NCBI RefSeq assembly: GCF_032191835.1
Contig: NC_083230.1
Coordinates: 87,544,001-87,608,000, forward strand
Direction: 5' to 3'
From: Heteronotia binoei
Lineage: Eukaryota
Length of the DNA: 64,000 nucleotides
This document shows positions 1,771 to 57,115 of the stretch, one piece after another. The position numbers and the translations under genes were made by a program. Under the pieces are notes generated by a model. The model was not told the DNA's origin and searched no databases. It worked only from the letters and a program-made list of their open reading frames with translations. Every line of letters starts with the position of its first letter. Position 1 is the first letter of the stretch.

Positions 1771-3228
1771 GAACCTAGGGTCCAGCAGGGGAATATGTGC
1801 TGAGAGACAATATTCATTAATCACTGAAGACTGAATCTGATTTCCTCTATAGAGATTATTATAGACATACACAAAGGAATATAAAATATCTTTTGGTTTA
1901 TTAAACATCTCCTCCTTTTAAATTTTTAACAGCCATGATTAAAAAAACTGCCACATGGGCATGAGCTCTAATTGAAGGAAGACCAAGTTCTGCCTGCTAT
2001 AGAGCCACTGGCAATCCCTTCGACAGTGCCAAATGTGTCTAAAGAGGGGGGGAGGAGATCTGATTCCTCCAAATGTTAACAACTTTTCCCAGGTAGTGGA
2101 CCCCGATACTAGTCAAATTGCTTAACCAGATAAATAACCCTCCTTCCTCTGCTCAATGCCTAGAAAGCAGAATTACAGCACACTATAAAGTATGTTCATT
2201 GGGTTGCAATTTCTTTAAATTACTGGCTTTATTGATTTTATGTGTACTTTTGTTGTACATCGTCTAATAATAATAATAATAATGATAATTCTAGTAGGAT
2301 GGAAAACTTGTATTGTAGTTTCATTCCATAAAAAGTGGACAAAACAAAGCCAAAAAATTATTGCCCCATAATAAATCTTCTTGACAAGGCTTCAAAACTT
2401 TAAGAGAAATATCTTCTTCTTTTGTACTAATACCTATTATTGCCAAAGAAAATGTCCATGATGAGAATCTTGACAGGGATACTTTGATTTTTGGAAACGA
2501 GAAATATGAAAATTGAATTTACCTTTCCACAATGATTGTTTTATCTTAAGACAGGCACTACATACAAGCACACTGATGATTTGTTCACAATTTTAAACAG
2601 TTTTCTGAAGAGGTCTGCATCACTATAGCTTGAAAGCAGAGCTGAGTCTCTGCACAGCAGAATTCTGTTGTCTGGCTACTTGATGAATAAGTTCACACTT
2701 AGGCATGTTGTTTAGAAAAGACAGAAGGTTTTTTTTGGGGGGGGGGTTTACTGTGAGAGAACACCATACTTGATAGAAAAGGCAGAGTAAAGGCTTTTAG
2801 CTATTTATCTCAGCTAGGCTGGAGACAGAGTAGACAGTATGTCCAGCCTTCACAGTGGACCCAGACAGAAAGACAGAGACCGGGGAGAGACCATCCTATC
2901 TACCCATGCACTAACTCTCTGCTGCCCTGCCCAGAGACTCCAAAGTCTATGCTTTGCAATGTTACACAGTTATGCAACATTGCACAGTCCATTCCTTTGA
3001 GCACAGTTGATGGCAGTTGGTAATTAAAACAATTTTATTGGTAAAATATGGTAATAAATCTATTTCTTACATCTTTAATAACTTCTTTTATCTATCCCAT
3101 ATATTACTTTCTACTCACCCCTCCCCCCGTTACTTGACCCCCGCCGGTGTTATTTACTTAAAATGCTAATATTTAAGGGTACCCTTAAGTATTAAAACAA
3201 AAAATTATATTCTTCTTCTTTCTAAAAC

Positions 3229-6200
3229 TTAATCATTATCAAAAATTGTCCAATGTCCTTTTATTTTCCACTCTTTTTCTACATATCTTCTAAACTTTTT
3301 CCACTCTGTTTTAAAAACTTCTAAATAATAATCTCTTAATATTCTTGTTAATTTGTCCAATTCACTCCATCTCATAACTTTTATAGTCCAATCCCATTTC
3401 TCTGGTATTTTTTCTTGCTTCCACAACTGCGCATATAATGTCCTAGCAGCTGAAAGCAAGTACCAAATTACAGTTCTATCTTCTTTTGGAAATTTTTCCA
3501 TTTGTAATCCCAACAGAAGAGTCTCTGCAACTTTCTTAAATGCATATCCCAAGATCTTAGAAATTTCTTGTTGAATCATCTGCCAATACTTTTTTACTCT
3601 TTTACAAATCCATGACATATGGTAGAAAGAACTGTCATGTTTTTTTACATTTCCAACATCTATCTGGCATCTTATTGTTCATCTTTGCCAATTTTTTAGG
3701 AGTCATATACCATCTATACATCATTTTAAAACAGTTCTCTTTAATACTATGACACATCGAAAGCTTCATAGAATTCTTCCACAAGTATTCCCAAGTTTCC
3801 ATCTGTATTTCTTTATTTACATTAATTGCCCATTTAATCATTTGAGATTTCACTACTTCATCCTCCGTAGACTATTTTAAAAGTAATTTATATATTTTTG
3901 AAATTAATTTTTCATTGTCTCCAAGCAGAACTTTTTCCATTTCTGTTTGTTCTTTTCTTATTTCTTCAGTTTTGATATCTTTTCCACCAAGCTCTTTATT
4001 TGTTGCATTTGGAACCAATCATATTTATTATTCAGCTCTTCAGCAGTTTTCAATTCTATTTTGCCACTTTGTATTTTTAATAATTGATTATATGACAACC
4101 ACTTTTCTTCACCTATCTCAGCCGTTATTTTTATTACTTCAGCTGGCACTATCCATAACGGTCTTCTCTCATCTCCATATTTCTTATATTTCATCCATGT
4201 ATTTAGCAAAATATTTCTTATATAATGGTGAGAGAAAAAACCGTCCATCTTTTTTCCATAATACAAATACGCATGCCAGCCAAATTTATTTCCATGACCT
4301 TCCAGCGCTAAGAGTTTTTTGTTTAACAGCATTTTCCATTCTTTTATCCACACTAAACAAATTGCTTCCTGATATAATTTTAAATTTGGTAGTTGAAATC
4401 CACTTCTCTCTTTTGCATCTGTTAAAATTTTAATTTTGATCCTTGGTTTCTTCCCAGCCCACACAAATTCTGAAATTTTTCTTCGTCATTTATCAAATTG
4501 TTTACTATCTTTCACAATGGGAATAGTTTGAAACAAATACATTATTCTTGGTAGAATATTCATTTTAATTGCAGCTATTCTACCCAGCAATGAGAAATTA
4601 AGTTTATTCCATTTTAACATATCTTCATCCATTTTACACCTAGCTTCTCATAGTTATTTTTAAACAGATCAATATTCTTCATTGTTATCTTCACACCCTA
4701 ATATTTTACCTTAGAGGTAACTTCACAGCCCGTCAGTCTCTGCAAGACCTGTTGCTTGTTTGTTTGCATATGTTTACATAAAAATTTTGATTTTTCTTTG
4801 TTAATATAAAGTCCCGCTAACTCCCCATATTCTTGTATTTTAGCTAACAACAAAGGTATAACTTGTATGGGATTTTCATTTATAAACATTATATCATCGG
4901 CAAATGCTCTGTATTTGTAAGTAAATCCTTTTATTTTTAATCCTTCTATTTCTTTATCTTCTTGGATCTGCATCAGTAATATTTCAAGAGTCATTATAGA
5001 CAACAATGGGGAAAGTGGACAGCCTTGTCTTGTACCTTTGCTAATTATCATATCTTCTGTAAGATCTGCATTTATACATAGCCTTGCACGTTGTTCGGTG
5101 TATATTGCTTTTATCATTCTTATAAAGTTTTCTCCCAGCTCCATTTTCTCCATTACTGCAAACATAAAGTCCCAGTTTAAATTGTCAAATGCTTTCTCTG
5201 CATCCGCAAAGAATAATGCTACTTCCTTTTCTGGATGTCTTTCGTAATATTCTACAGTATTTACAACAGTTCTGATATTGTCTCTTATTTGCCTTTTGGG
5301 AAGAAATCCCGCTTGATCTTCCTTTATAAAAATTATCAAATGTTGTTTAAGCCATTTTGCCAAGATTCTTGTATATATTTTATAGTCATTGTTTAATAGC
5401 GAAATTGGTCTGTAATTTTTTACATTCGTGACATCTCTATCTTCCTTTGGTATCAACGAAATAACAGCTTCCTTCCATGTGTTTGGTATTTTCCCTTTTA
5501 TTCTTATCATATTCATCAACTTCTGCAATTTCGGTATTAACTCATCTTTAAAGGTTTTAAAATATTTAGCTGTATATACATCTGGGCCAGGTGCCTTTCT
5601 ATTTTTCACTGCATTAATTGCTGCTTCAATTTCTATTTTTTCCATTGGATCATTCAAAACTTTTCGCATATTTTCTGTTAAGGGTTCTATTTTTATCTTT
5701 TGTAGATACTCATCCATCTTTTCTTTATTTTAACACCTTTAAACAACTTGGCATGATACTTAAAAAATTCTCTTTTTATTCCCTCTTGGCTAACCACCTC
5801 TCTTCCATCTACCACAATTTTATTAATAATTTTATTTTCTCTCTTTTTCTTCAGTTGCCAAGCCAAATACTTTCCAGGTTTATTTGCTCCCTCAAAAGAT
5901 TTCTGCTGCAGACTTTTCATATTCCATTCCAATTCTTTATTTAACAAATGTCTCATTTGCGTTTGTAATATTGTAATTTCCCTTATCATTTTCTTTTTCC
6001 CTGTCCTTTTTCTCAACTCCCCTTCTTTTTTCTTTATTTCATTTTGAATGTCCAACAACTGTTTTTCTTTTGCTCTCTTATCTTTATTATTCAAAGTAAT
6101 CAATATTCCTCTCATTACTGCTTTGTAGGCATCCCAGACTGTCTGAAATTCTATATCCTCTTTGTCATTCATTTGAAAGAAAGCTTTAGTTTTATTTTCT

Positions 6201-6978
6201 AGGTATGTCACTATTTCTTTATTCTGTAGTAAATCTTCATTCAATCTCCATCTTCTCAACTTCTTAGACAATTTTGTAATCCACATTATTGGGTTATGGT
6301 CAGCCCCAATTTTAGGTAAAATCTCTATTTTCCTTGTTAGAAGATTTAAATCTTTAGTGCCCCACAACATGTCAATTCTGGAAAAAGTTTTGTGTCTTGC
6401 TGAAAAAAAGGTGTAGTCCCGCACTTCAGGGTTAAATTTCCTCCATATGTCCTCCAAATTTTCTTGTTTGACCAATTAAAAAAAATACTTTGGCAATTTT
6501 CCTTCTTTGTTATTAATTTTTTCCCCCAGACCTATCCAATGAATTCTTAATTGTTCCATTAAGGTCTCCCATTATCAAAACTTGGTCATAAGTCAGTTTA
6601 TCAAGTTGTTGTATAATGTTTTTTAAAAAAGCATCTTTTGCACCATTAGGCGCATAAGGGCCCAATAACAACGGGTTTTTTTGCATTTAATATTATTTCA
6701 ACTGCTACAAATCTTCCATCTTTATCTTTAAACACTAATTTTGGCTCCAATTCTTGTTTAATATAAAAAATCACTCTTCTTTTCTTCTGCTCAGCCAATG
6801 AAAAAAATTCTAACACCAATTTTTTATTCCATAAAAATTTGTAATTTTTTTGTTTAATATGCACTTTTTGTAAACAAACTATATTACAATTTTGCTTTTT
6901 AATCTAATGAAATGTTGCCCTTCTTTTTTGTGGTGAATTTAGTCCATTTACATTCCAAGACAATAATTTGTAATCCAT
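3229..6978 (-). pseudogene. L1 ORF2 (AP endonuclease, reverse transcriptase, zinc knuckle) with multiple stops and frameshifts
   Basis: Starts MDYKLLSWNVNGLNSPQKR. Contains APE motifs (TFFSARHKTFSRIDM, ADHNP), RT motifs (KAPGPD, YRPISLLNNDYK, DAEKAFD, GTRQGCPLSPLL, AFADD) and CWKCKK..FYHM.W.C. Split over ORFs 6646-6864, 5693-6475, 4698-5717, 3958-4464, 3635-3853 and 3229-3618. Confidence 0.93.
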
Positions 6979-7726
6979 CATGGTGCATATTCTTTATGTT
7001 CTTCATAAAATCTACGCAGTTCCTTTGCATTTGTAATTGTGATTCCTTTCCCCTAAAGCTCAAACCTTCAGGTATTATCCATTTAAACCTCATTTCATTG
7101 TCCTGTAATTTTTCTGGCAGTTTTTTATATGTTCTTCTGTCATTTATCACTTGCCTTGGCAACTCCTTCATAATTCTTACTCTGCTGCCTCCCACTATCA
7201 ATGTCTTTTCAAAGTTTTTGTTTATGATCTTTCCCATAATTTCTTTTGTCATGTATCTTATGTCTACATCTCTTGGTAAATTATTCTTTTTGGCATAGAG
7301 TGAGTTCACTCTATACATATAATCATACATATTTTTAGTCTCTTCAGGGACTTCCTCTAAAAATTCTGCAATTATTTTTATTATATATTCTTTCAAGTCA
7401 CCATCTTCCTTTTCAGGTACTCCTCTCAGACATATGTGAGTCTCCATCAATTTGCAGTCATGGATTGTCACTTTTTCTGGTATTTTCAACAAGGTGGAGT
7501 CATGTACTTTCATTCTCCCTTTTACCTCCTGCACTTTCTTAGATATTTCCTCTGTCTCATTTCTGAGATCTTCCATATCTTTTTAAATCTCTTCTATAAT
7601 TTCTTTTTTTGATTCAGTTATCATCTCTTTCATGCCTTTCATCATTCTGGCCTCCATTACCTCTAATTGATCCTGCATTTTCTCCAATGAAGTAGCCCTT
7701 GCACGGGTTTGCTTGTGTTCTGACAT
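6978..7726 (-). pseudogene. L1 ORF1 (coiled coil plus RRM/CTD type), frameshifted
   Basis: ATG at 7726 (MSEHKQTRAR..), frameshift in a T-run near 7605, then LRGVPEKE..RVNS..PRDV..RIMKELP..FKWIIPEGL. A probable second indel near 7048 restores ..ELRRFYEEHKEYAP-stop. Confidence 0.85.
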
Positions 7727-10589
7727 TTAAAAACACCGAAAATTTTGATCTCACTAATTTCAAATTTTACTATCAGGTTCAAAAGATTAGAGCTTGCTTT
7801 TTACAACAAGCCCAATTTCTCCGTCCTCAGAGCTTTCCAGACTGAGATATGAATTTTTAAAATTTTTAAATCCTTCAAAATGGCGGTTGCGACTTTTTGC
7901 TTCTCTCTGAAGATTTTTTTGCTTTTTCTTTTAAAGGCTTCTAAAGTCCATTATAAACAATATGTCCAATAGTATTTATCTTCTTATCATCATCTCAATT
8001 AATTCCAACAACTTTTAATGTCCCAAACACTTTAAAAATATTATTTTAATTTTGACCTCTTTGCAATGGCCACCGATGTTTCTCAATGGTATTATAATCC
8101 TAGAGTAGGCTTTTCATCTGCTACTTCCTGCTTTACTTGCCACCAAATCTCATTTTCACTGGTAAAGAGATCTCACAATACTTGACGTACTTCCTGTGTT
8201 GATTGTATATACTACAGGTCTGTGACAATGGTGCTCTTTTTTCAAAACCGCAAGTAGACCAAACAATAAATTCCTTTCCACTTTTTAGCACTGCCCTTTA
8301 AATTTACAAAGTCCAAATTTCACCTCTTCCTCCCTTCTTCTTCCAAGCTTTCTAGATTTCCATTTCCCACCTTCTGAATTTATTCTGTTTAACTGTAAAT
8401 AGTCCCAGAATGAAAGATAGTAATCTGTACCTTTTCTGCCAGTTATCCATATCCACACCGGTCTTATGTAGCTTTATATGTTTAGCAATGTCCAAGAAGG
8501 TTAGGATTCTGTCGAGCTTATGTCAAATAAATGACTCTGAGAACTTCTGTAGATGATGAAAATGCAACTCTTCTCTGGAGACCCCTCAAAGCCTCAAAGG
8601 AGCCTCCCCCCGGGACTCCCTTTTAGCCAAGGTAAATCTCCTCAAAGTTTCCTGTGCATATCTTGGACTAATCTCTAACTGAGAAAAGTAGGCAGTAGGC
8701 ATTAATTTGCCTTTCACTACCCCGAACAGAAGTTCCAGCCTGCTCCCATTATGAGAAGCAGCTCAGCTCGGCATTTTCCTCCCCAGAAGTCTCCAGTTGA
8801 TGGCAGTTGGCATGGGAGCTGGCCAGGTAGCTGCCATTGGCATGCACTCTCCATTTACTGGATTGCTTCAATAATGGATTCTTCAAGTGTATGTGCTCCT
8901 TTGAAACCTGCATTGTTGGTGGCATTTATCACTCAGCATCATTCATCATATTGGCACATATTCAGAATTTAATGGATCAAGCTATGGTTCCCAGACAGCC
9001 ATGTGAGATCAAATTTGCCATCCAATTCAGAACAATGAATATGAATACTCTCGACTTTTGGCATCGGACACATCAAATAGGCAGGACTAGAATATTACAG
9101 AGATAAGCCATAACTCCCCCTCCCCAGTCCCCACACCACTCCAGTTGGATTGAGACTGCCAAAAAAGCTACCTCTTTTGTACATCAATCTGTTTTTTTTT
9201 CCTGATGGGTGTTGTGCAGAAATGCTCTTTACCCTAAAATCTACCTCAGTATTAATAAATTTATTAACTGAAAATACTCTCCACATGTACTCCATCAACT
9301 TTAATATTGGTAATGGACTGAGATGGGGACACTTAAAGGAGATAAATAATCTCTCTCCAACACTACTTTTTCTGGCTTTTGCATGTTTACATGAGAGTCT
9401 AGATCAGCTTTGCCCCTGGCATGCAGAAACATCCTCCACGATCTTTTTGGTCAAGGCCACCAACTGCTCTGTTATATTTCTGGCCATAATAATGACAGAA
9501 CCCACATTTTCTTCTGTGCCTCAAAAGGGATTTTGAGATATGAGCAGGCTTGGCTGGCTAGCTCTGCATACTTGGCCTCATTCTGATCATGAACCAGCAC
9601 TTCCTGAAATCTTCAGACAAGTGGCTCATTTAATCATTTGACTTATTTGATTTAATTTCATATTTCTTTGACAAGAAGAATGCCACTCAGCCCTGGCAAC
9701 ACTGCTACTTTTAAATTGGTGACTTGGTTTTAAAGCATGTTTTTTTTTTTCCTGCTTTGCTTGACATAATCCTTCAAAGGTATGGTTCCGGTATGAACAA
9801 TCATCTGATGTCTTCTAAAGTGAAGGTGAATGCAAAGAATTTATTTACCTTTTAGTTTGTAGTTTAGTTTCCCTGCCTTCCTTTCTCATCTGAGACTGAC
9901 TTCTCACCAGCAGTTGCTTCACACCGGGGCTTCTGCTTGAGCTGGATTTCCAGATTCGTTTGCTGTAAGGGGAATGGGAGGTGGCCGTGGATCAAAAGGC
10001 ACCCACACAGGAACTGGCGGGGAATCGATCGCTTGAGCTGGCTCATACAGATGCCTGGGGGTGGAACAACTGCCAGTGAGGAATCAGTCTGATGGTTTTA
10101 TAATGCCTTTCTGTCCAGTTCTCAGGTACTGGGCATTATTTCTGTTTGTGTAACTTTAGCAAGTTTCCTTCCCATTCCCATTCCATTTAATTTTCCATAG
10201 TTTTTGCTTGTTTTAACTTGAGGCAGTGGTATCTTTATAATTTATTTGCCAACTTTTTCTGATTGTTTGTATACATTTTATTTAAGCCTTTGCTGTAGTT
10301 CAAAATAACAAGAACAGCACAACCCTCCATCCTTGATCAGAGTTGACCCTCCAATCAAAATTCTTCAGCTTGGTTTTAACTTGTCAGTTTTTAATAATTT
10401 CTTTTAAAAATTGTTGGCAGAGCAATTAACACAGCAACAGTGCACAAGTAGCAATCTGGAGGCAGACAAGGAACAACACTTAAAAGGAGAGAAGATACTG
10501 ACCTCACTATCCTATCTAATTATCTTCTTGCTGTCTCCTTCAGGATCTTCTTCTCTTCATTGACCGATTCCCAACTAGCCTTACCCTGC

Positions 10590-32381: not shown

Positions 32382-35236
32382 TGGTGACAAACAGTATGGG
32401 CTGATTGCCAAAGTCTCAAGGTGGCAGGAGGAAGGTTGAGGGCCTAACTTGCCTGGGAAATAGATGTTTCTATACGAATGCTAGAAGTGTTCGAAGTAAA
32501 ATTGGTGAATTGGAATGTTTAGTGTTGGGGGAAAACATAGACATTGTGGGAATTTCAGAAACTTGGTGGAATCAGGAGAATCAGTGGGACATGATGATTC
32601 CTGGATATAAGTTATATCGGAAGGATAGGAAGGGAAGGGTTGGAAGGGGGGGGGCGGCTCTGTATGTCAGAGAGGGTATACAGTCCAGTAAGACTGAGGT
32701 CAAAGAATTAGATTCCCTTCTAGAAATGCTTTGGGTCAAAATAGAGGGGCCAAAGGGAAATTTAACTATGGGAGTTCGTTATCGCCCACCAAACCAAAAC
32801 ATAGAGGACGATTATAATATGATGGAAGAATTAAAGATAGTGGCTAAACATAAAAACTGTGGCGTAATAGGTGATTTTAACTACCCGCAGATTGATTGGG
32901 TCAATATGTGTTCAGGTCGAGAGAAAGAGATTGAGTTTTTAGATGCTCTCAACGACTGTGCTATGGAGCAGATGGTCACAGAACCTACCAGGGGTGGGGC
33001 GATCCTGGATTTGGTCGTAAGTAATGCCCAAGACTTGGTGAGAGATGTAAAAGTGATCGCACCGCTTGGGAGCAGTGACCATAACGTTATTGATTTCACC
33101 ATTTGTATAAATAGGGGGTTGCCCCAAAAGACCAGCACAACCACGTTTAACTTTAAAAGGGTAAATTCTCTGAGATGAAGAGGCATGTGAAAAGGAAACT
33201 GAAAGGAAAGGTAAATACAGTCAAAACCCTTGGGGAAGCTTGGAGGTTATTTAAAACTACAATCCTAGAAGCTCAGATAAAATATATAGCACAAGTTAGG
33301 AAAGGCACAAACAGGTATAAGAAAAGGCCTGCATAGATAACAAACAAAGTAATGGAAGCTGTAAAAGGTAAGAAGGACTCCTTTAAGCAGTGGAAAGCTA
33401 GTCCAAGTGAGATTAATCAAAGGGAACACAGGCTGTGGAAAATCAAATGCAAGACTGTGATCAGGCAGGCAAAAAGGGACTATGAGGGGCATATTGCAAA
33501 AAACATAAAGATCAACAATAAAAAATTCTTCAAATATATTAGAAGCAGGAAACCAGCCAGGGAGGCAGTGGGGTCCTTGGATGACCAAGGGGTCAAAGGA
33601 TTACTGAAGGGGGATAGGGAAATGGCTGAGAAGCTGAATGCATTTTTTGCCTCCGTCTTCACTATGGAAGACGAGAAGTGTTTGCCCGCTGCAGAACCAC
33701 TAATTTTGGAAGGGGTGTTGAAAGACCTGAGTCAGATTGAGGTGACAAGAGAGGAGGTCCTACAACTGATGGACGAATTAAAAACTAATAAGTCAATAGG
33801 TTCGGATGGCATACATTCAAGAGTTCTGAAAGAACTCAAAGTTGAACTTGTGGATCTCCTGACAAAAATATGTAATCTTTCATTGAAATCTGCCTCCATT
33901 CCTGAGGACTGGAAGGTAGCAAATGTCACCCCAATCTTTAAAAAGGGTTCTAGAGAAGATGCGAGAAATTACAGGACAGTCAGTCTGACTTCAATACCGG
34001 GAAAGTTGGTAGAAACCATTATCAAGGACAGAATGAGTAGGCACATTGATGAACACAAGTTATTGAGGAAGACTCAGCATGGGTTCTGTAAGGGAAGATC
34101 TTGCCTAATTAACCTGTTACAGTTCTTTGAGGGGGTGAACAAGCATGTGGACAAAGGGGACCCAATAGATGTTGTTTACCTTGTCTTCCAAAAAGCTTTT
34201 GATAAAGTTCCTCATTAAGGCTCCTTAGTAAGCTCAAGAGTCATGGACAGGTCCTCTTGTGGATCAAAAACTGGCTAATTAATAGGAAGCAGAGAGTGAG
34301 TATAAATGGGCAGTCTTCGCAGTGGTGGATGGTAAGCAGTGGGGTGCCGCAGGGCTCAGTACTGGGTCCCATGCTCTTTAACTTGTTCATAAATGATTTG
34401 GAGTTGGGAGTAAGCCGTGAAGTGGCCAAGTTTGTAGATGACACTAAATTGTTCAGGGTGGTGAGAACCAGGGAGGATTGTGAGGCACTCCAAGGGATCT
34501 GTTGAGGCTGGGTGAGTGGGCGTCAATGTGGCAGATGAGGTTTAATGTGGCCAAGTGCAAAGTAATGCACATTGGGGCCAAGAATCCCAGGTACAAATAC
34601 AAGTTGATGGGGTGTGAACTGGCAGAGACTGACCAAGAGAGAGATCTTGGGGTCGTGGTAGATAACTCACTGAAAATGTCAAGACAGTGTGCGATTGCTA
34701 TAAAAAAGGCCAATGCCAGGCTGGGAATTATTAGGAAGGGAATTGAAAACAAATCAGCCAGTATCATAATGCCCCTGTATAAATTGACGGTGTGCTCATT
34801 TGGAGTACTGTGTGCAATTCTGCACCTCAAAAAGGATATTATAGCATTGGAAAAAGTCCAGAAAAGGGCAACTAGAATGATTAAAAGTTTGGAACACTTT
34901 TCCTATGAAGAAAGGTTAAAACGCTTTCTTCATAGGGGCTCTTTAGCTTGGAGAAATGTCGACTGCAGGGTGACATGATAGAGGTTTACAAGATTATGCA
35001 TGGGATGGAAAAAGTAGAGAGAAAAGTCCTTTTCTGCCTTTCTCACAATACAAGAACTCGTGGGCATTCAATGAAATTGCTGAGCAGTCAGGTTAGAATG
35101 GATAAAAGGAAGTACTTCTTCACCCAAATGGTGATTAACATGTGGAATTCACTGCCACAGGAGGTGGCGGCGGCTACAAGCACAGCCAGCTTCAAGACGG
35201 GATTGGATAAAAATATGGAGCAGAGGTCCATCAGTG
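32382..35236 (+). pseudogene. CR1 ORF2 (AP endonuclease plus reverse transcriptase), fragmented
   Basis: YTNARSV, IVGISETWW, YRPPNQ, GDFNYP, SSDHN, YRTVSLTSIPGKLVE, QHGFCKGRSCL, FQKAFDKVPH, GVPQGSVLGP, FVDDTKL, KRKYFFTQ.VINMWNSLP. Start approximate. Confidence 0.92.
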
Positions 35237-35370
35237 NNNNNNNNNNNNNNNNNNNNNNNNNNNNNNNNNNNNNNNNNNNNNNNNNNNNNNNNNNNNNNNN
35301 NNNNNNNNNNNNNNNNNNNNNNNNNNNNNNNNNNNNNNNNNNNNNNNNNNNNNNNNNNNNNNNNNNNNNN
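35237..35370. other. Assembly gap (134 N) inside the CR1 3'UTR
   Basis: Run of N. Confidence 0.99.
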
Positions 35371-35689
35371 GTGTTGGACTGGATGGGCCATTGGCCTGAT
35401 CCAACATGGCTTCTCTTATGTTCTTATGTTCTCATTGCAGCAACTTAGAAATGGATGGTAACTTTGGAGCACAGGCATCATGCACTTTCTGTCTGTTTTG
35501 AAGCAGATGCTTAAAATAACAGCAGATGTAAAGTTCATGCTATTGATTCCCTGACTGCAAGATGTATTCTCAAAGCTAAGAAGCACTTGCTTGTAGTTGA
35601 TGTCTCCCTCTCTCCAATGGCAAGTAAATGACACAAAGAGCAACACTGGAGCCTCTCACTGACCGTAAAGCATCCACTCTAGTGTACAG

Positions 35690-53085: not shown

Positions 53086-53418
53086 TTCCCTCCTGCTCAG
53101 GCTACAAGGTCAGTGCTATTCAGAATAAAATAAAAATGGTTATTTTATGACATAGAGTTGAAGGGGCTTTTCCCCATGATTTCTTTGTAGCCCCTTTGCA
53201 ATCCCTGCTGAGTCCTGTTCTTCCAATAGCCCCATCTTCATCTCCATTTTCTTTTGCCCATCTGCCAGGTAGTGGTAGGGCTGGGGCAGCTCAATCACCT
53301 AACTGTGCAGCCTGTCTTACTGGCAGTCCAAAGGTCAGGGCATGGTCTCAGGAAGCCTTTCTGCCATCCTGTTATGAAGAATTATGGATCTTCTTCGTGG
53401 TCTCTGTGCATCACACTG

Positions 53419-56031
53419 ATGGGATATAGGCGCCCGCGCCGATCTCGATCGGTATTCTTGAAAGCTGCGGATTTCCGCGCCCCAGGCCCAGTGCGCATGC
53501 GCAGAAGCCCCACCGCGCATGCTCACAGGGACCGGAGCGGACATCCCGCCAGTTCTCTTCTGACCGCCGCTTGGATCAGTCGATCTCTCGCCACGGTCGG
53601 TAGAAATCCTTTCTTGGAAGCACTACCAATACAAAGCTTTGCCCTTTGGCCTCTCCACGGCTCCGTGAGTTTTTACAAAGACTATGGTGGTGGTGGCGGC
53701 CCATCTACGTCTACAAGGGATCACTATCTTTCCCTACATAGACGATTGGCTACTGGTGGCAAGTTCAAAACCTCTACTACTACAGCATATAGAAGTCACC
53801 TTAACCCTTCTACGAAACTTAGGCCTGCAGGTCAACCTAAAGAAATCGGCACTGCAGCCCTTTCAGAGGGTACAATTCATAGGGGCCATTTTGGACTCAT
53901 GAGCCTGCAAGGCATTCCTCCCGACACAAAGAACGGAGGACATCAGGTCTCTGATACATGTATTCCTAACCAACCCTACAGTCACAGCGTTCCAAGTCCA
54001 ACGCCTCCTGGGCCTAATGGCAGCGACCACGGCAGTGTTGAAATTCTCCAGATTCCACATGCGAATACTACAGTTGTGGTTCCTGCGCGTGTTCAACTGT
54101 CAGACAGACCTCCCCTCGCGCCAACTGACTGTCCCGACGTCGGTAGTCTGGACCCTATCCTGGTGGCAAGAGAAGCAGAACCTCCTCCAAGGAGCCCCGT
54201 TCCACAGGCAGACTCCTACGTTGACCATAACGACGGATGCATCCTTATGGGGCTGGGGAGCACATGCAAACGACATGTGTGTGGGGGGCAGATGGCCTCA
54301 GGATCTTCTGCACTACCACATCAATTTCCTAGAGCTGCTGGTCCTACATCATGCCATTCTCTCATTCAGACACCTGATTGTGGGGAGAACGGTAGCGATC
54401 TTGACAGACAACACTACAGCCCTATCTTATGTAAACAAACAGGGTGGCACAGTCTCAAGGAAGTTATGCCTTCTAGCGTTAAAGATTTGGGAGATTTGCA
54501 GAGAATTGGACACTACCCTAGTAGCCACACACCTACCGGGCAATCTGAATGCCTGTGCAGATTACCTCAGTCGAGGAGGGGCCTCACTCCACGAGTGGGA
54601 ACTCAATTGGGAGTTCCTCCAACCGGTATTCCAGAAGTGGGGCACACCGGAAGTGGATGTCTTCGCCACATGCAACACCTCAAAATGCGACAAATTTTGC
54701 TGCAGAGGGGGTGCAGACCCTCTATCGTTGGGAGATGGGTTACTGATCCCATGGACTCGCTTGCACGTGTACCTCTTTCCACCGATTCCACTAATCAGGA
54801 GAGTGGTTCACAAGATTCAACTCGAACGCCCCAAGGGGATTCTCATCACACCATGGTGGCCCAGACAACAGTGGTTCTCCCCGATACTGAAGCTGTCTCG
54901 CGGAATGTTCCACCACTTTCCGACGAACTCAGACCTTCTACTATCACACGAGGGACGAGTGATTCACCACGATGTGCCTCACTTGAAACTCACGGCATGG
55001 AGACTGGTGTGACGAGATTATCTGATAGAGCCCTGGATGTTATGCTAAACAGTAGAAAATCATCCACTAGAAAATCATATGGATATAAATGGACAAGGTT
55101 TATCCAATTCATGAACAAAACTAACAGGGAACCGAAGACAGCAGGCCTCCCACTAATACTAGACTTTCTACTCTCACTCCTTGACAAGGGACTAACGGTG
55201 TCATCTGTGAGAGTGTACTTAGCGGCCATATCGGCTAACCATGAGCAACTTGAAGGCCACTCGGTGTTCTCACACCCTGATACTAAACGGTTCTTAAAGG
55301 GCTTGGCAAGATTGTACCCTGCGGTACGAGTCCCAGCCCCCGCTTGGGACCTCCCAGCAGTATTGCGGGCGTTAACAGGAAAACCCTTCGAACCCATGGC
55401 GACATGTTCCTTGCAATTACTATCCTGGAAAACAGCCTTCTTAGTGGCCGTTACCTCTGCTCGCAGGGTCGGTGAACTGGCAGCGCTGCGCTGCGACGAC
55501 CCATATTTGAGATTCAGTGCGGAAGGAGTGGGGTTGCGTCCTGATGTAACCTTTCTTCTGAAAGTAACATCCGCTTTTCACCTGAATGCAGAAATTTACC
55601 TACCCACATACTTTCCTAATCCAAGTACGGACTCGGAAAGGAGACTACATACACTAGATGTAAAGAGGGCACTCTCATTTTACTTACATAGAGTAAGACC
55701 TGGACGTAGGGACCCTAGACCCTTTGTCTCATATTCCACAACGTCGCAAGGTGTAAGAGTTTCGTCACAGCGGATCTCGAAGTGGATAACTGAGACTATA
55801 AAACTGTGCTACTTGTTGAACAAGCAACCCCTGCCAAGACAGGTTAGAGCTCATTCCACTAGAGCCCTAGCGACTTCGGCAGCCTTTATGAGAGGAATAC
55901 CACTGAAAGACATTTGTGATGCTGCCACTTGGTCCTCCTCGCATACGTTTGTGAGCCATTATGCGTTGGACCTGAACTGGCGTAGACGCTCATCAGTGGG
56001 CCGTGCGGTGCTTCAAGAGGTTTCTCGCTGA
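53419..56031 (+). CDS. Uninterrupted 870-codon frame overlapping pol and ending in an intact-looking tyrosine recombinase (domain about 55040-56031)
   Basis: Part of ORF 53254-56031; first ATG inside the element at 53419. YR motifs TSARRVGEL, HTLDVKRAL, RAHSTR, AATW, FVSHY. Confidence 0.7.
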   Translation: MGYRRPRRSRSVFLKAADFRAPGPVRMRRSPTAHAHRDRSGHPASSLLTAAWISRSLATVGRNPFLEALPIQSFALWPLHGSVSFYKDYGGGGGPSTSTRDHYLSLHRRLATGGKFKTSTTTAYRSHLNPSTKLRPAGQPKEIGTAALSEGTIHRGHFGLMSLQGIPPDTKNGGHQVSDTCIPNQPYSHSVPSPTPPGPNGSDHGSVEILQIPHANTTVVVPARVQLSDRPPLAPTDCPDVGSLDPILVAREAEPPPRSPVPQADSYVDHNDGCILMGLGSTCKRHVCGGQMASGSSALPHQFPRAAGPTSCHSLIQTPDCGENGSDLDRQHYSPILCKQTGWHSLKEVMPSSVKDLGDLQRIGHYPSSHTPTGQSECLCRLPQSRRGLTPRVGTQLGVPPTGIPEVGHTGSGCLRHMQHLKMRQILLQRGCRPSIVGRWVTDPMDSLARVPLSTDSTNQESGSQDSTRTPQGDSHHTMVAQTTVVLPDTEAVSRNVPPLSDELRPSTITRGTSDSPRCASLETHGMETGVTRLSDRALDVMLNSRKSSTRKSYGYKWTRFIQFMNKTNREPKTAGLPLILDFLLSLLDKGLTVSSVRVYLAAISANHEQLEGHSVFSHPDTKRFLKGLARLYPAVRVPAPAWDLPAVLRALTGKPFEPMATCSLQLLSWKTAFLVAVTSARRVGELAALRCDDPYLRFSAEGVGLRPDVTFLLKVTSAFHLNAEIYLPTYFPNPSTDSERRLHTLDVKRALSFYLHRVRPGRRDPRPFVSYSTTSQGVRVSSQRISKWITETIKLCYLLNKQPLPRQVRAHSTRALATSAAFMRGIPLKDICDAATWSSSHTFVSHYALDLNWRRRSSVGRAVLQEVSR
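53618..55012 (+). pseudogene. DIRS pol: C-terminal half of RT, RNase H and DAM-methylase-like (MT) domain; two in-frame TGA stops
   Basis: HYQYKALPFGLSTAP*VFTK, PYIDDWL, GAILDS*, TTDASLWGWGA, HINFLELL, TDNTTA, NACADYLSR, DVFAT, YLFPP. Confidence 0.92.
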
Positions 56032-56079
56032 TGGACCGTTGCACCCTCCTCCAGGTAGGACTCTGGCTTGCTAATCTCC

Positions 56080-56172
56080 CATCAGTGTGATGCACAGAGA
56101 CCACGAAGAAGATAAACAGGTTTCCTACCTGTAACTGATGATCTTCGAGTGGTCATCTGTGCAGTCACACTA
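56080..56172 (+). other. DIRS internal complementary region (ICR)
   Basis: 56080-56112 is the reverse complement of 53389-53421. 56115-56172 is the reverse complement of 56371-56428. Confidence 0.95.
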
Positions 56173-57115
56173 CCCGCCCTCCTTCCCCTCCGCTGCCGGT
56201 CCATCTCTAAGGGCTTACGCAGCGGTCAGAAGGAACTGGCGGGATGTCCGCTCCAGTCCCTGTGAGCATGCGCGGTGGGGCTTCTGCGCATGCGCACTGG
56301 GCCTGGGGCGCGGAAATCCGCAGCTTTCAAGAATACCGATCGAGATCGGCGCGGGCGCCTATATCCCATCAGTGTGACTGCACAGATGACCACTCGAAGA
56401 TCATCAGTTACAGGTAGGAAACCTGTTTCTATGAATGACTTGGGCAGGAATCCAAGGCAGCCTTATTTGGGATTAAGTCCCATTGAGCTCAGTGTCCACT
56501 TCAGAGTTATCATAGGATTGGGCTGCTGGAAGCTTTATACCTCTTGCTTGGTATAAAGTAAATGTTTCACATGGTGCAATAAGGGGTAGGAAGGCATTGA
56601 TTTACATCCCTTTACCCTAAAAGTTCTGTTTTTGTAAAAACAAAACAAAACATCACTTTGCTGCTTTACACATGAACAGTTGTAATTCTGCATAATTGTC
56701 CTCCTGGATGGGGGCTGCTTTTGAGGTCAGCTCCTTCTCTAGGGTTGCTGACTCTGGCTTGAAAAATTCCTGGAGATTTGGAGGTGGAGCTTGGGGAATT
56801 TGGAGTTTGGTAAGGTTGTCAGTAAGGATGGACATGAACTGGGGGAAATGGTGGTTTGATTCATTTTGCAGTTTATTTGATTTCTGACCTGTTTAATGGT
56901 TCCTTTGGTTTGGAAGGTGTTGAACAGGCTCTCCTCCACTCACCCTCCAAATTTGGTGAAGATTGGATTTGAAATATCCTTATGAGCCCCCCAAAGCAGG
57001 AACCCCAGAAAAGCAGTTTCAGCTCTTCATAAAGGTCTGCAAGTTATCGACCCCACAAATCCGTGCTCATGTGATTATGGTTAGGATTTATTAAGTCAGA
57101 CACAAGAGTTAACCT

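What the first reader, a model, noticed from the sequence alone, without database searches (positions are those of the whole stretch)
53388..56430. Gag-less DIRS derivative with intact replication signals and one open frame from the left ITR to the tyrosine recombinase
Seen: both ITRs and the ICR are intact and nearly identical to their partners. About 200 bp after the left end the sequence jumps straight to mid-RT (HYQYKALPFG, about 53618), so gag and the RT N-terminus are absent. The join leaves an ATG inside the left ITR (53419) in frame with the recombinase, with no stop for 870 codons. Known: DIRS1 elements normally carry gag, and their YR frame overlaps pol. Inference: this could be a non-autonomous DIRS subfamily mobilised in trans, or a retrocopy of a subgenomic/spliced RNA that expresses the recombinase (the join lies near GGAAG|CACTAC). 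Either would be a helper-dependent element that still supplies its own integrase.
Basis: partly seen in the sequence, partly recalled or inferred. Interest (0 to 1): 0.75.

Follow-up and report, generated by a model that had tools for sequence, protein, structure and literature searches.

The report
Gag-less, internally deleted DIRS retrotransposon copy
This is a young 3-kb copy of a DIRS-type jumping gene that has lost its gag gene and the front half of its reverse transcriptase but kept its end repeats and recombinase gene; it is most likely an ordinary defective copy, and whether the deleted form has spread could not be tested here.

Summary
Window 53388-56428 is a DIRS1-like element with matched inverted terminal repeats and a two-part internal complementary region (ICR). 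The sequence passes from the 5' leader straight into mid-RT at 53621. The recombinase (YR) frame is stop-free for 870 codons from the ATG at 53419.

The long open frame is not a product of the join. 803 of its 870 codons are an inherited family trait. Three full-length relatives (Pogona, Pelodiscus, one Logan contig) keep the same frame open for 961-994 codons behind a single gag stop. Synonymous shuffles of the window's pol predict 11.6 stops in that frame; none is observed. The other 67 codons are open with about 0.10 probability by chance. This scan had already noted the trait on other DNA of this genome (s1-330103), and Piednoel 2011 lists "long ORF overlap".

About 1.7-2.9 kb is missing. 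CpG content shows the copy is young.

I found no second copy, no RNA contig across the junction and no same-family full-length reference. No tool could search this genome, so the copy number of the junction and the GT..AG borders remain untested.

Best reading: a one-off defective copy (0.6). A trans-mobilised subfamily is about 0.27; a spliced-RNA retrocopy about 0.04.

The parts
53388..53427 (+). Left terminus: the 40 nt that are repeated in reverse complement in the left half of the ICR. 53388-53410 is the 'divergent ITR' part. Contains the ATG at 53419.
   Evidence: (I3: 40 nt, 98%)
53411..53570 (+). Left ITR, conserved part. It has a GCGCATGCGC palindrome at 53493. Its inner boundary motif CCAGTTC..CCGCC is shared with the Pogona and Pelodiscus elements.
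53571..53620 (+). About 50 nt remnant of the 5' leader, weakly similar to the post-ITR leader of the Pelodiscus element. It ends at the deletion junction.
53600..53621 (+). Deletion junction. The last non-homologous bases lie upstream and the first clearly homologous RT codon is CAC at 53621. The exact breakpoint cannot be placed more finely than this without a same-family full-length copy.
53621..55012 (+). Pol remnant in frame mod3=1. It holds the RT C-terminal half (LPFGL at 53639, YIDD kept), RNase H (Pfam 54224-54442, weak) and the methyltransferase-like C-terminal region. In-frame TGA stops at 53666 and 53900; normal pol stop at 55010. No frameshift against the relatives.
53419..56031 (+). 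Stop-free frame mod3=0 (870 codons from ATG 53419). Codons from 53620 on (803) are homologous to the gag-frame/YR ORF of the relatives.
55057..56028 (+). Tyrosine recombinase proper. SAM-like N-domain 55057-55239; catalytic domain 55429-55965 with SARR, HSTR, W and HY conserved.
56074..56171 (+). Internal complementary region. Left half 56074-56113, right half 56114-56171, meeting at GAT|AAA.
56219..56428 (+). Right ITR (to about 56400) plus a right extension of about 28 nt (56401-56428) that is matched only by the ICR.

Best explanation
The element is a young, internally deleted, non-autonomous copy of a reptile-type DIRS1-like retrotransposon.

Shown:
- A full-length relative has the order ITR, leader, gag, one TGA, pol in the +1 frame overlapped by the still-open gag frame, YR, ICR, ITR.
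- This copy has lost about 1.7-2.9 kb, running from about 50 nt into the leader to the middle of RT.
- Everything from RT motif LPFGL to the right end is full length: 2.79 kb here against 2.76-2.83 kb in the relatives.
- The 870-codon open frame is the family's selected gag-frame/YR overlap (803 codons) joined by chance to a stop-free frame of the GC-rich ITR and leader (67 codons).

Inferred:
- The deletion is a one-off event.
- It arose either by a template jump during the reverse transcription that made this copy, so that it arrived already defective, or by a chromosomal deletion soon after insertion.
- The copy now does nothing. It cannot make Gag or RT.
- It probably does not translate its recombinase efficiently, because the gag start that heads this frame in intact elements is gone.
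For: Structure and deletion.

Full-length architecture in relatives: L002 Pogona is 5918 bp and L003 Pelodiscus is 4752 bp. Gag and YR share one frame, separated by a single TGA, and that frame stays open for 961-994 codons.

Distance from the left end to LPFGL: 251 nt here against 1918 and 3159 nt in the relatives.

The open frame is a selected trait: 0 stops observed against 11.6 +/- 2.8 in 5000 synonymous shuffles (minimum 3). The third frame has 29 stops against 29.6 expected.

The ITR/leader part is open by chance with P about 0.10.

Youth:
- CpG observed/expected is 0.93-1.09 in the ITRs, 0.55 in pol and 0.71 in YR, against 0.10-0.11 in the flanks.
- The ITRs differ by 2 CpG-type transitions and 1 indel.
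- Pol has no frameshift.

Recent autonomy of the lineage: 24 of the 39 listed differences from RNA contigs of the family fall on pol third codon positions (p = 0.0009). Pol was therefore under purifying selection until shortly before this copy formed.

No sibling copy was detected. No other gag-less note appeared among the scan's 69 DIRS notes on this genome. These are weak because none searches the genome itself.
Against: The key test, the copy number of the junction in this genome, could not be run.

Two nonsense hits in the pol remnant are more than the ITR clock predicts. There were only 6 such candidate codons, against 2 CpG changes in about 80 strand-specific opportunities in the ITR and ICR pairs (about 1% under the point estimate). 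Meanwhile 8 equivalent codons in the YR frame are untouched. That pattern would fit a lineage that had already lost pol function before its last transposition while keeping YR.

The numbers are tiny and were chosen after the fact. CpG-island-like ITRs may also mutate more slowly than the element body.
Confidence: 0.6

Rival explanations
1. The copy belongs to a propagating non-autonomous DIRS subfamily. Its RNA would be packaged and reverse transcribed by Gag and RT from full-length elements in trans, while the retained ITRs and ICR rebuild the ends. Its own recombinase might also be used.
For: - All cis signals are intact and the copy is young.
- The YR ORF is intact with its catalytic motifs.
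- Pol is hit by two stops while the YR frame is spared.
- In Dictyostelium an engineered DIRS-1 lacking ORF1 and half of ORF2/3 still yielded cDNA, so RT can act in trans (PMC7192593).
- The scan notes apparently intact young DIRS copies, which could serve as helpers, in the same genome (s1-345526; not checked).
- Family RNA is present in three RNA runs.
Against: - No second copy or junction match was found anywhere I could look.
- No listed RNA contig crosses the junction.
- Full trans-retrotransposition of a truncated DIRS has not been shown even experimentally.
- The pol remnant has no frameshifts, and its differences from expressed relatives look like purifying selection. Any non-autonomous history must therefore be short.
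Confidence: 0.27
2. The copy is a retrocopy of a spliced or subgenomic DIRS RNA that joins the leader to mid-pol in order to express the recombinase.
For: The 5' side of the join ends in ..GGAAG, which is compatible with an exon end. Other notes of the scan report splice-like signals elsewhere in DIRS copies of this genome (unverified).
Against: - The join lands inside the RT domain 1.4 kb upstream of the YR domain, which is not a sensible position for a YR mRNA.
- It leaves no start codon of its own.
- The residue before HYQY is not conserved among relatives (L, E, or shifted), so no conserved acceptor AG is implied.
- No joint or spliced contig was seen in the RNA runs.
- DIRS splicing of this kind is not described in the papers read.
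Confidence: 0.04
3. The 870-codon frame is a host-domesticated recombinase gene rather than transposon debris.
For: A long intact ORF with conserved YR motifs.
Against: - The ORF is flanked by its own near-identical ITRs and ICR.
- Its CpG content is ten times that of the flanks, so it is very young.
- The N-terminal 470 codons are an out-of-frame reading of pol. Differences from relatives fall mostly on this frame's first codon position, so no protein-level constraint is visible there.
- There is no exon structure, and the exact protein is absent from the 15-billion-protein collection.
Confidence: 0.02

Closest known systems
AcDIRS1 / AcDIRS2 of Anolis carolinensis and other vertebrate DIRS1-like elements (Piednoel et al. 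2011, PMC3266345)
   Same: The repeat geometry matches: ICR halves of 40 and 58 nt, a conserved ITR of about 145-160 nt, a divergent ITR of about 23 nt and a right extension of about 28 nt. AcDIRS1 has 40-58, 140, 26 and 26. The pol order is RT-RH-MT. The YR carries HSTR. There is a long ORF overlap, an AAA circular junction as in AcDIRS2, and no target-site duplication.
   Different: The element is 3.04 kb, against 5.9-6.0 kb for AcDIRS and 3.97 kb for the shortest of 28 annotated elements. It lacks gag and the N-terminal half of RT, and pol carries two stops. Protein identity to the nearest relatives I could fetch is only about 43-54% in pol, so it represents a different family.
trDIRS-1bsr*, the engineered truncated Dictyostelium DIRS-1 (Malicki et al. 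2020, PMC7192593)
   Same: Almost the same design: ORF1 (gag) and about half of the pol/YR-overlap region are removed while both terminal repeats and the ICR are kept. In that system cDNA was made, which implies that RT acts in trans.
   Different: That element is artificial, from an amoeba, and carries a marker gene. Completion of its retrotransposition could not be shown. The present copy is natural, from a vertebrate, and of unknown mobility.
SIRE, the short non-autonomous derivative of VIPER in Trypanosoma cruzi (Vazquez et al. 1999/2000, as summarised in PMC6681497)
   Same: It is an internally deleted derivative of a tyrosine-recombinase retroelement that keeps the terminal parts.
   Different: SIRE is about 0.43 kb, has no coding capacity and is highly repeated. 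The authors themselves leave open whether it is mobile. The present copy keeps 2.4 kb of coding sequence including YR, and only one copy is known.
Deleted, helper-dependent LTR retroelements such as mouse IAP I-delta-1 and ETn/MusD
   Same: These are internal deletions removing gag/pol parts, with terminal repeats intact and mobilisation by proteins of full-length relatives.
   Different: For those elements many copies with the same deletion and new germline insertions are documented. Nothing comparable is shown here.

Membership tests
DIRS1-like retrotransposon (DIRS order) | Inverted terminal repeats | tested here: met
   145-nt arms at 99%, extending to about 180 nt with indels
DIRS1-like retrotransposon (DIRS order) | Internal complementary region whose two adjacent halves are complementary to the left and right termini | tested here: met
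   56074-56113 against 53388-53427 (39/40); 56114-56171 against 56371-56428 (58/58)
DIRS1-like retrotransposon (DIRS order) | Pol with RT, RNase H and a methyltransferase-like domain homologous to DIRS pol | tested here: met
   43-54% identity over about 460 residues to the pol of three DIRS relatives, without gaps against L003. Pfam RVT_1 and RT_RNaseH match. The RT is only its C-terminal half.
DIRS1-like retrotransposon (DIRS order) | Tyrosine recombinase with catalytic R, H-x-x-R and Y | tested here: met
   SARR, HSTR, W and HY align with 12 relatives. Pfam Phage_int_SAM_4 and Phage_integrase match below their cut-offs.
DIRS1-like retrotransposon (DIRS order) | No target-site duplication | tested here: met
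   The flanks ..gaattatgg | and | ctatgaatg.. share no direct repeat at the ends
Autonomous (complete) DIRS1-like element | Gag ORF and complete RT | tested here: not met
   Gag is absent. The first 220-260 pol residues are absent. There are two in-frame stops.
Amplified non-autonomous subfamily mobilised in trans | Two or more copies at different loci sharing the same deletion junction | not testable with these tools
   No tool searches this genome. There is only one copy in the window. The protein, exact-match and metagenome searches were blank.
Amplified non-autonomous subfamily mobilised in trans | Retains the cis signals needed for replication (ITRs, ICR) | tested here: met
   The ICR is shown to be essential in Dictyostelium (PMC7192593).
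Amplified non-autonomous subfamily mobilised in trans | RNA spanning the junction | tested here: inconclusive
   Three RNA runs hold family contigs at 93-99% identity over 53644-56060 and over the ITRs. No listed contig bridges 53556-53643. Most records were not shown, and contigs cannot prove absence.
Retrocopy of a spliced RNA | GT..AG at the borders of the missing segment in the full-length element | not testable with these tools
   No same-family full-length copy could be fetched. The nearest relatives are only about 50% identical in protein.

The most novel reading that the evidence does not exclude
The deleted form is itself a young, amplifying parasite of full-length DIRS elements. It would be a natural mini-DIRS that borrows Gag and RT in trans but keeps the ITRs, the ICR and an intact recombinase frame. 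That would be the first natural evidence that DIRS proteins complete a full retrotransposition cycle in trans. It would also hint that the recombinase is preferentially needed in cis.
Probability: 0.25. Interest if true: 0.5.

Novelty: new member of a known kind. Interest (0 to 1): 0.25.

Why it matters
As it stands this is one more defective transposon copy.

Its value is as a natural counterpart of the engineered truncated DIRS-1 of Malicki et al. 2020. That construct was reverse transcribed in trans, but whether it could complete transposition was left open. If the same junction recurs at other loci, it would settle two points. DIRS Gag and RT would be shown to serve foreign RNAs through a whole cycle. 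The leader beyond about 50 nt, gag and half of RT would be shown to hold no essential cis signal.

The copy also gives a clean internal control for the family's odd coding layout. The gag-frame/YR overlap stays stop-free across pol (0 stops against about 12 expected), while the third frame behaves randomly.

Tried and rejected
1. Sibling copies through proteins.
- The 870-aa frame-0 ORF found relatives of at most 51% identity.
- The 160-aa junction peptide found nothing.
- Exact look-ups of four ORF versions were not in the collection.
- These databases evidently do not hold this genome's unannotated ORFs, so the blanks say little.

2. Exact 30-33-nt patterns of the junction and of the leader remnant in JGI metagenome contigs gave 0 hits.

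3. RNA runs. Only three metatranscriptome runs from one study hold parts of the element. Laid contigs cover the ITRs, the ICR and 53644-56060, but none listed crosses the junction. Depth there is dominated by conserved termini of many DIRS families and is not interpretable.

4. The scan's own notes, searched by sequence and by words, hold no other gag-less DIRS note. By the operators' own statement this blank is uninformative.

5. Nucleotide-level breakpoint mapping was rejected as not possible. The nearest full-length elements (Pogona, Pelodiscus) share only the ITR inner-boundary motif and a faint leader similarity.

6. I considered treating the two pol stops as proof that pol was dead before insertion. 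I rejected this as too weak: 2 of 6 codons, chosen after the fact, and the ITR CpG sites may be protected.

7. The flanks are not repeated in the window, so no empty-site comparison was possible.
Full report
**1. What is there**

Window 53388-56428 (+ strand) is a single DIRS1-like element. It is the only one in the 64-kb window.
- The inverted repeats are 53411-53555 and 56233-56377: 145 nt, 99% complementary. With one 1-nt indel and two C/T differences at CpG sites the match runs to about 53570.
- The internal complementary region is textbook. 56074-56113 is the reverse complement of the left end 53388-53427 (39/40). The adjacent 56114-56171 is the reverse complement of the right end 56371-56428 (58/58).
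- The geometry is ICR halves of 40 and 58 nt, a conserved ITR of about 145-160 nt, a divergent ITR of about 23 nt and a right extension of about 28 nt. This is the geometry tabulated for Anolis AcDIRS1/2, which are 5.9-6.0 kb long (PMC3266345).
- No target-site duplication is present.

**2. The deletion**

Homology to DIRS proteins begins abruptly at nt 53620/53621.
- In the recombinase frame the best database relative aligns from query residue 68.
- In the pol frame three relatives align from HYQYKALPFG.
- Pfam RVT_1 matches only model positions 130-203 of 205.

I fetched two complete relatives and one partial one: L002 from Pogona vitticeps (2801-8718, 5918 bp), L003 from Pelodiscus sinensis (4525-9276, 4752 bp) and L001, a Logan contig.
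- From the left end to the RT motif LPFGL they measure 3159 and 1918 nt. The window copy measures 251 nt.
- From LPFGL to the right end they measure 2758 and 2833 nt. The window copy measures 2789 nt.

So about 1.7-2.9 kb is missing: most of the leader, all of gag and the first 220-260 pol residues, including the RT motif DLKDAYFH. Everything downstream is full length.

The 50 nt between the ITR and the junction (53571-53620) look like the start of the normal leader.
- The ITR inner-boundary motif CCAGTTC..CCGCC is shared with both relatives.
- The following bases resemble the Pelodiscus leader faintly.

The breakpoint lies within 53600-53621. It cannot be placed more finely without a same-family full-length copy.

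**3. The reading frames**

The stop-free stretch in fact begins at 53254 in flanking DNA. It should not be credited to the join.

In all three relatives gag and the recombinase share one frame. They are separated by a single TGA, in the context (C/A)TT-TGA-CT. That frame then stays open for 961-994 codons across pol, which sits in the +1 frame.

In the window copy, shuffling synonymous codons of the 463 pol codons gives 11.6 +/- 2.8 stops in the recombinase frame (minimum 3 in 5000 shuffles). None is observed. The third frame has 29 stops against 29.6 expected.

The openness is therefore a selected, inherited trait.
- It is listed as 'long ORF overlap' for half of 28 annotated DIRS1-like elements (PMC3266345).
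- It was already noted by this scan on other DNA of the same genome (s1-330103). I re-tested it here.

Only the first 67 codons (ITR plus leader) are new. A stop-free run there in the required frame has a probability of about 0.10 by shuffling.

- At the first, all three relatives have Arg.
- At the second, an RNA contig of the family reads a sense codon.

Pol has no frameshift relative to the relatives. The recombinase part looks intact: SARR, HSTR, the conserved W and the HY tyrosine align with 12 relatives.

**4. Age and history**

The element is young.
- CpG observed/expected is 0.93-1.09 in the ITRs, 0.55 in pol and 0.71 in YR. The flanks are at 0.10-0.11.
- The ITR and ICR pairs differ by 3 substitutions and 1 indel in about 280 compared positions.

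Three RNA runs from one metatranscriptome study carry contigs of the family at 93-99% identity. Of the 39 listed differences in the pol region, 24 fall on pol third codon positions (chi-square p = 0.0009).

Two conclusions follow. The lineage of this copy was evolving under purifying selection on pol until shortly before the copy formed. The overlapping frame is kept open but is not conserved as protein there.

**5. Is it a subfamily, a spliced retrocopy, or a one-off?**

This is the crux, and I could not test it directly because no tool searches this genome. The indirect searches were:
- the window itself;
- the 5.8-billion-protein word search with the whole ORF and with the junction peptide;
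- exact look-ups;
- two exact-pattern scans of JGI metagenomes;
- the scan's own notes;
- the laid RNA contigs.

None shows a second copy or a junction-spanning RNA. None could be expected to if the copies exist only in this genome.

For a transposing deleted lineage:
- The cis signals are perfect.
- Pol has two nonsense hits among six candidate codons, while the ITR and ICR pairs show only two CpG changes in about 80 opportunities. Eight equivalent codons in the recombinase frame are untouched.
- Malicki et al. showed that an engineered DIRS-1 lacking ORF1 and half of ORF2/3 is still reverse transcribed, so RT acts in trans (PMC7192593).

Against it:
- The counts are tiny and were picked after seeing the stops.
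- CpG-island-like ITRs may be protected from decay.
- The same paper could not show a completed cycle for the truncated element.

Against splicing:
- The join sits inside RT, 1.4 kb upstream of the recombinase domain.
- It supplies no start codon.
- The residue preceding HYQY is not conserved among relatives.
- No joint appears in the RNA contigs.

**6. Would it make recombinase?**

Probably not efficiently. This part is inference.
- In intact relatives the recombinase frame is headed by gag and its start codon, across one TGA. Here both are deleted.
- The in-frame ATGs at 53419 and 53497 have C at -3.
- They lie in the left ITR, the first inside the 40 nt that the ICR duplicates.
- In Dictyostelium the DIRS-1 RNA lacks most of the left repeat (PMC7192593).
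- If the same holds here, the first AUG in the RNA is 53684 in the pol frame. It has a good context and opens 72 codons that end at the 53900 TGA.

**7. Verdict**

The most likely account (0.6) is a one-off defective copy. Its deletion arose by a template jump during the reverse transcription that produced it, or by a chromosomal deletion soon afterwards. A trans-mobilised subfamily is at about 0.27 and a spliced-RNA retrocopy at about 0.04.

It is a new member of a known kind, and interest is low to moderate. A single genome-wide BLAST of the junction would decide the matter.

Noticed in passing
L001:718-720, L002:5449-5451, L003:5884-5886: In three independent DIRS relatives (a Logan contig, Pogona, Pelodiscus) gag ends on the same context (C/A)TT-TGA-CT. 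The same frame continues open for 961-994 codons to the recombinase stop, and pol opens in the +1 frame upstream of that stop. This agrees with earlier notes of the scan on a recoding site at the gag stop.
   Followed up: partly
window 53493-53502 and 56286-56295: Each ITR carries the perfect palindrome GCGCATGCGC. From my own knowledge this resembles an NRF-1 type site. These are the only two occurrences in the 64-kb window. The ITRs have CpG observed/expected of about 1.0, so they look like small CpG-island promoters.
   Followed up: no
window 53899-53902: The base that makes the second pol stop (TGA at 53900) also creates an in-frame ATG (53899) for the recombinase frame. The result is an overlapping ATGA stop/start between a 72-codon pol-frame ORF (from ATG 53684, good context) and a 710-codon recombinase-frame ORF. 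This is probably coincidence.
   Followed up: no
window 56405-56420; L002 about 8697-8712; L003 about 9255-9270: The right termini of all three families keep a TTACAGGTA(A/G)G motif that looks like a splice donor, mirrored in the right half of the ICR. Other notes of the scan mention donor-like DIRS termini.
   Followed up: no
window 53545-53570; L002 about 2939-2964; L003 about 4685-4706: The inner boundary of the left ITR carries a motif, CCAGTTC(C/T)..CTT..(A)CCGCC, that is conserved between otherwise unalignable ITRs of three DIRS families. It may be a cis signal.
   Followed up: no
L003:1035-1405 and 2753-2891: Upstream of the complete Pelodiscus element lie an isolated ICR plus right ITR, and then a further left ITR of a related family. 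DIRS fragments are clustered or nested there.
   Followed up: no
window 4698-7576 (-) and 32405-35448 (+); N run 35237-35370: Two LINE-like elements. One has an RVT_1 ORF at 4698-5714 on the minus strand. The other has endonuclease and RVT_1 ORFs at 32405-34215 on the plus strand and runs into the assembly gap.
   Followed up: partly
window 56082-56188 in RNA runs X1-X3: Summed contig depth over the ICR is 4800-8900, against 10-20 over the coding body. Many different contigs share the conserved ICR and termini, so depth there reflects the number of DIRS families rather than expression.
   Followed up: no
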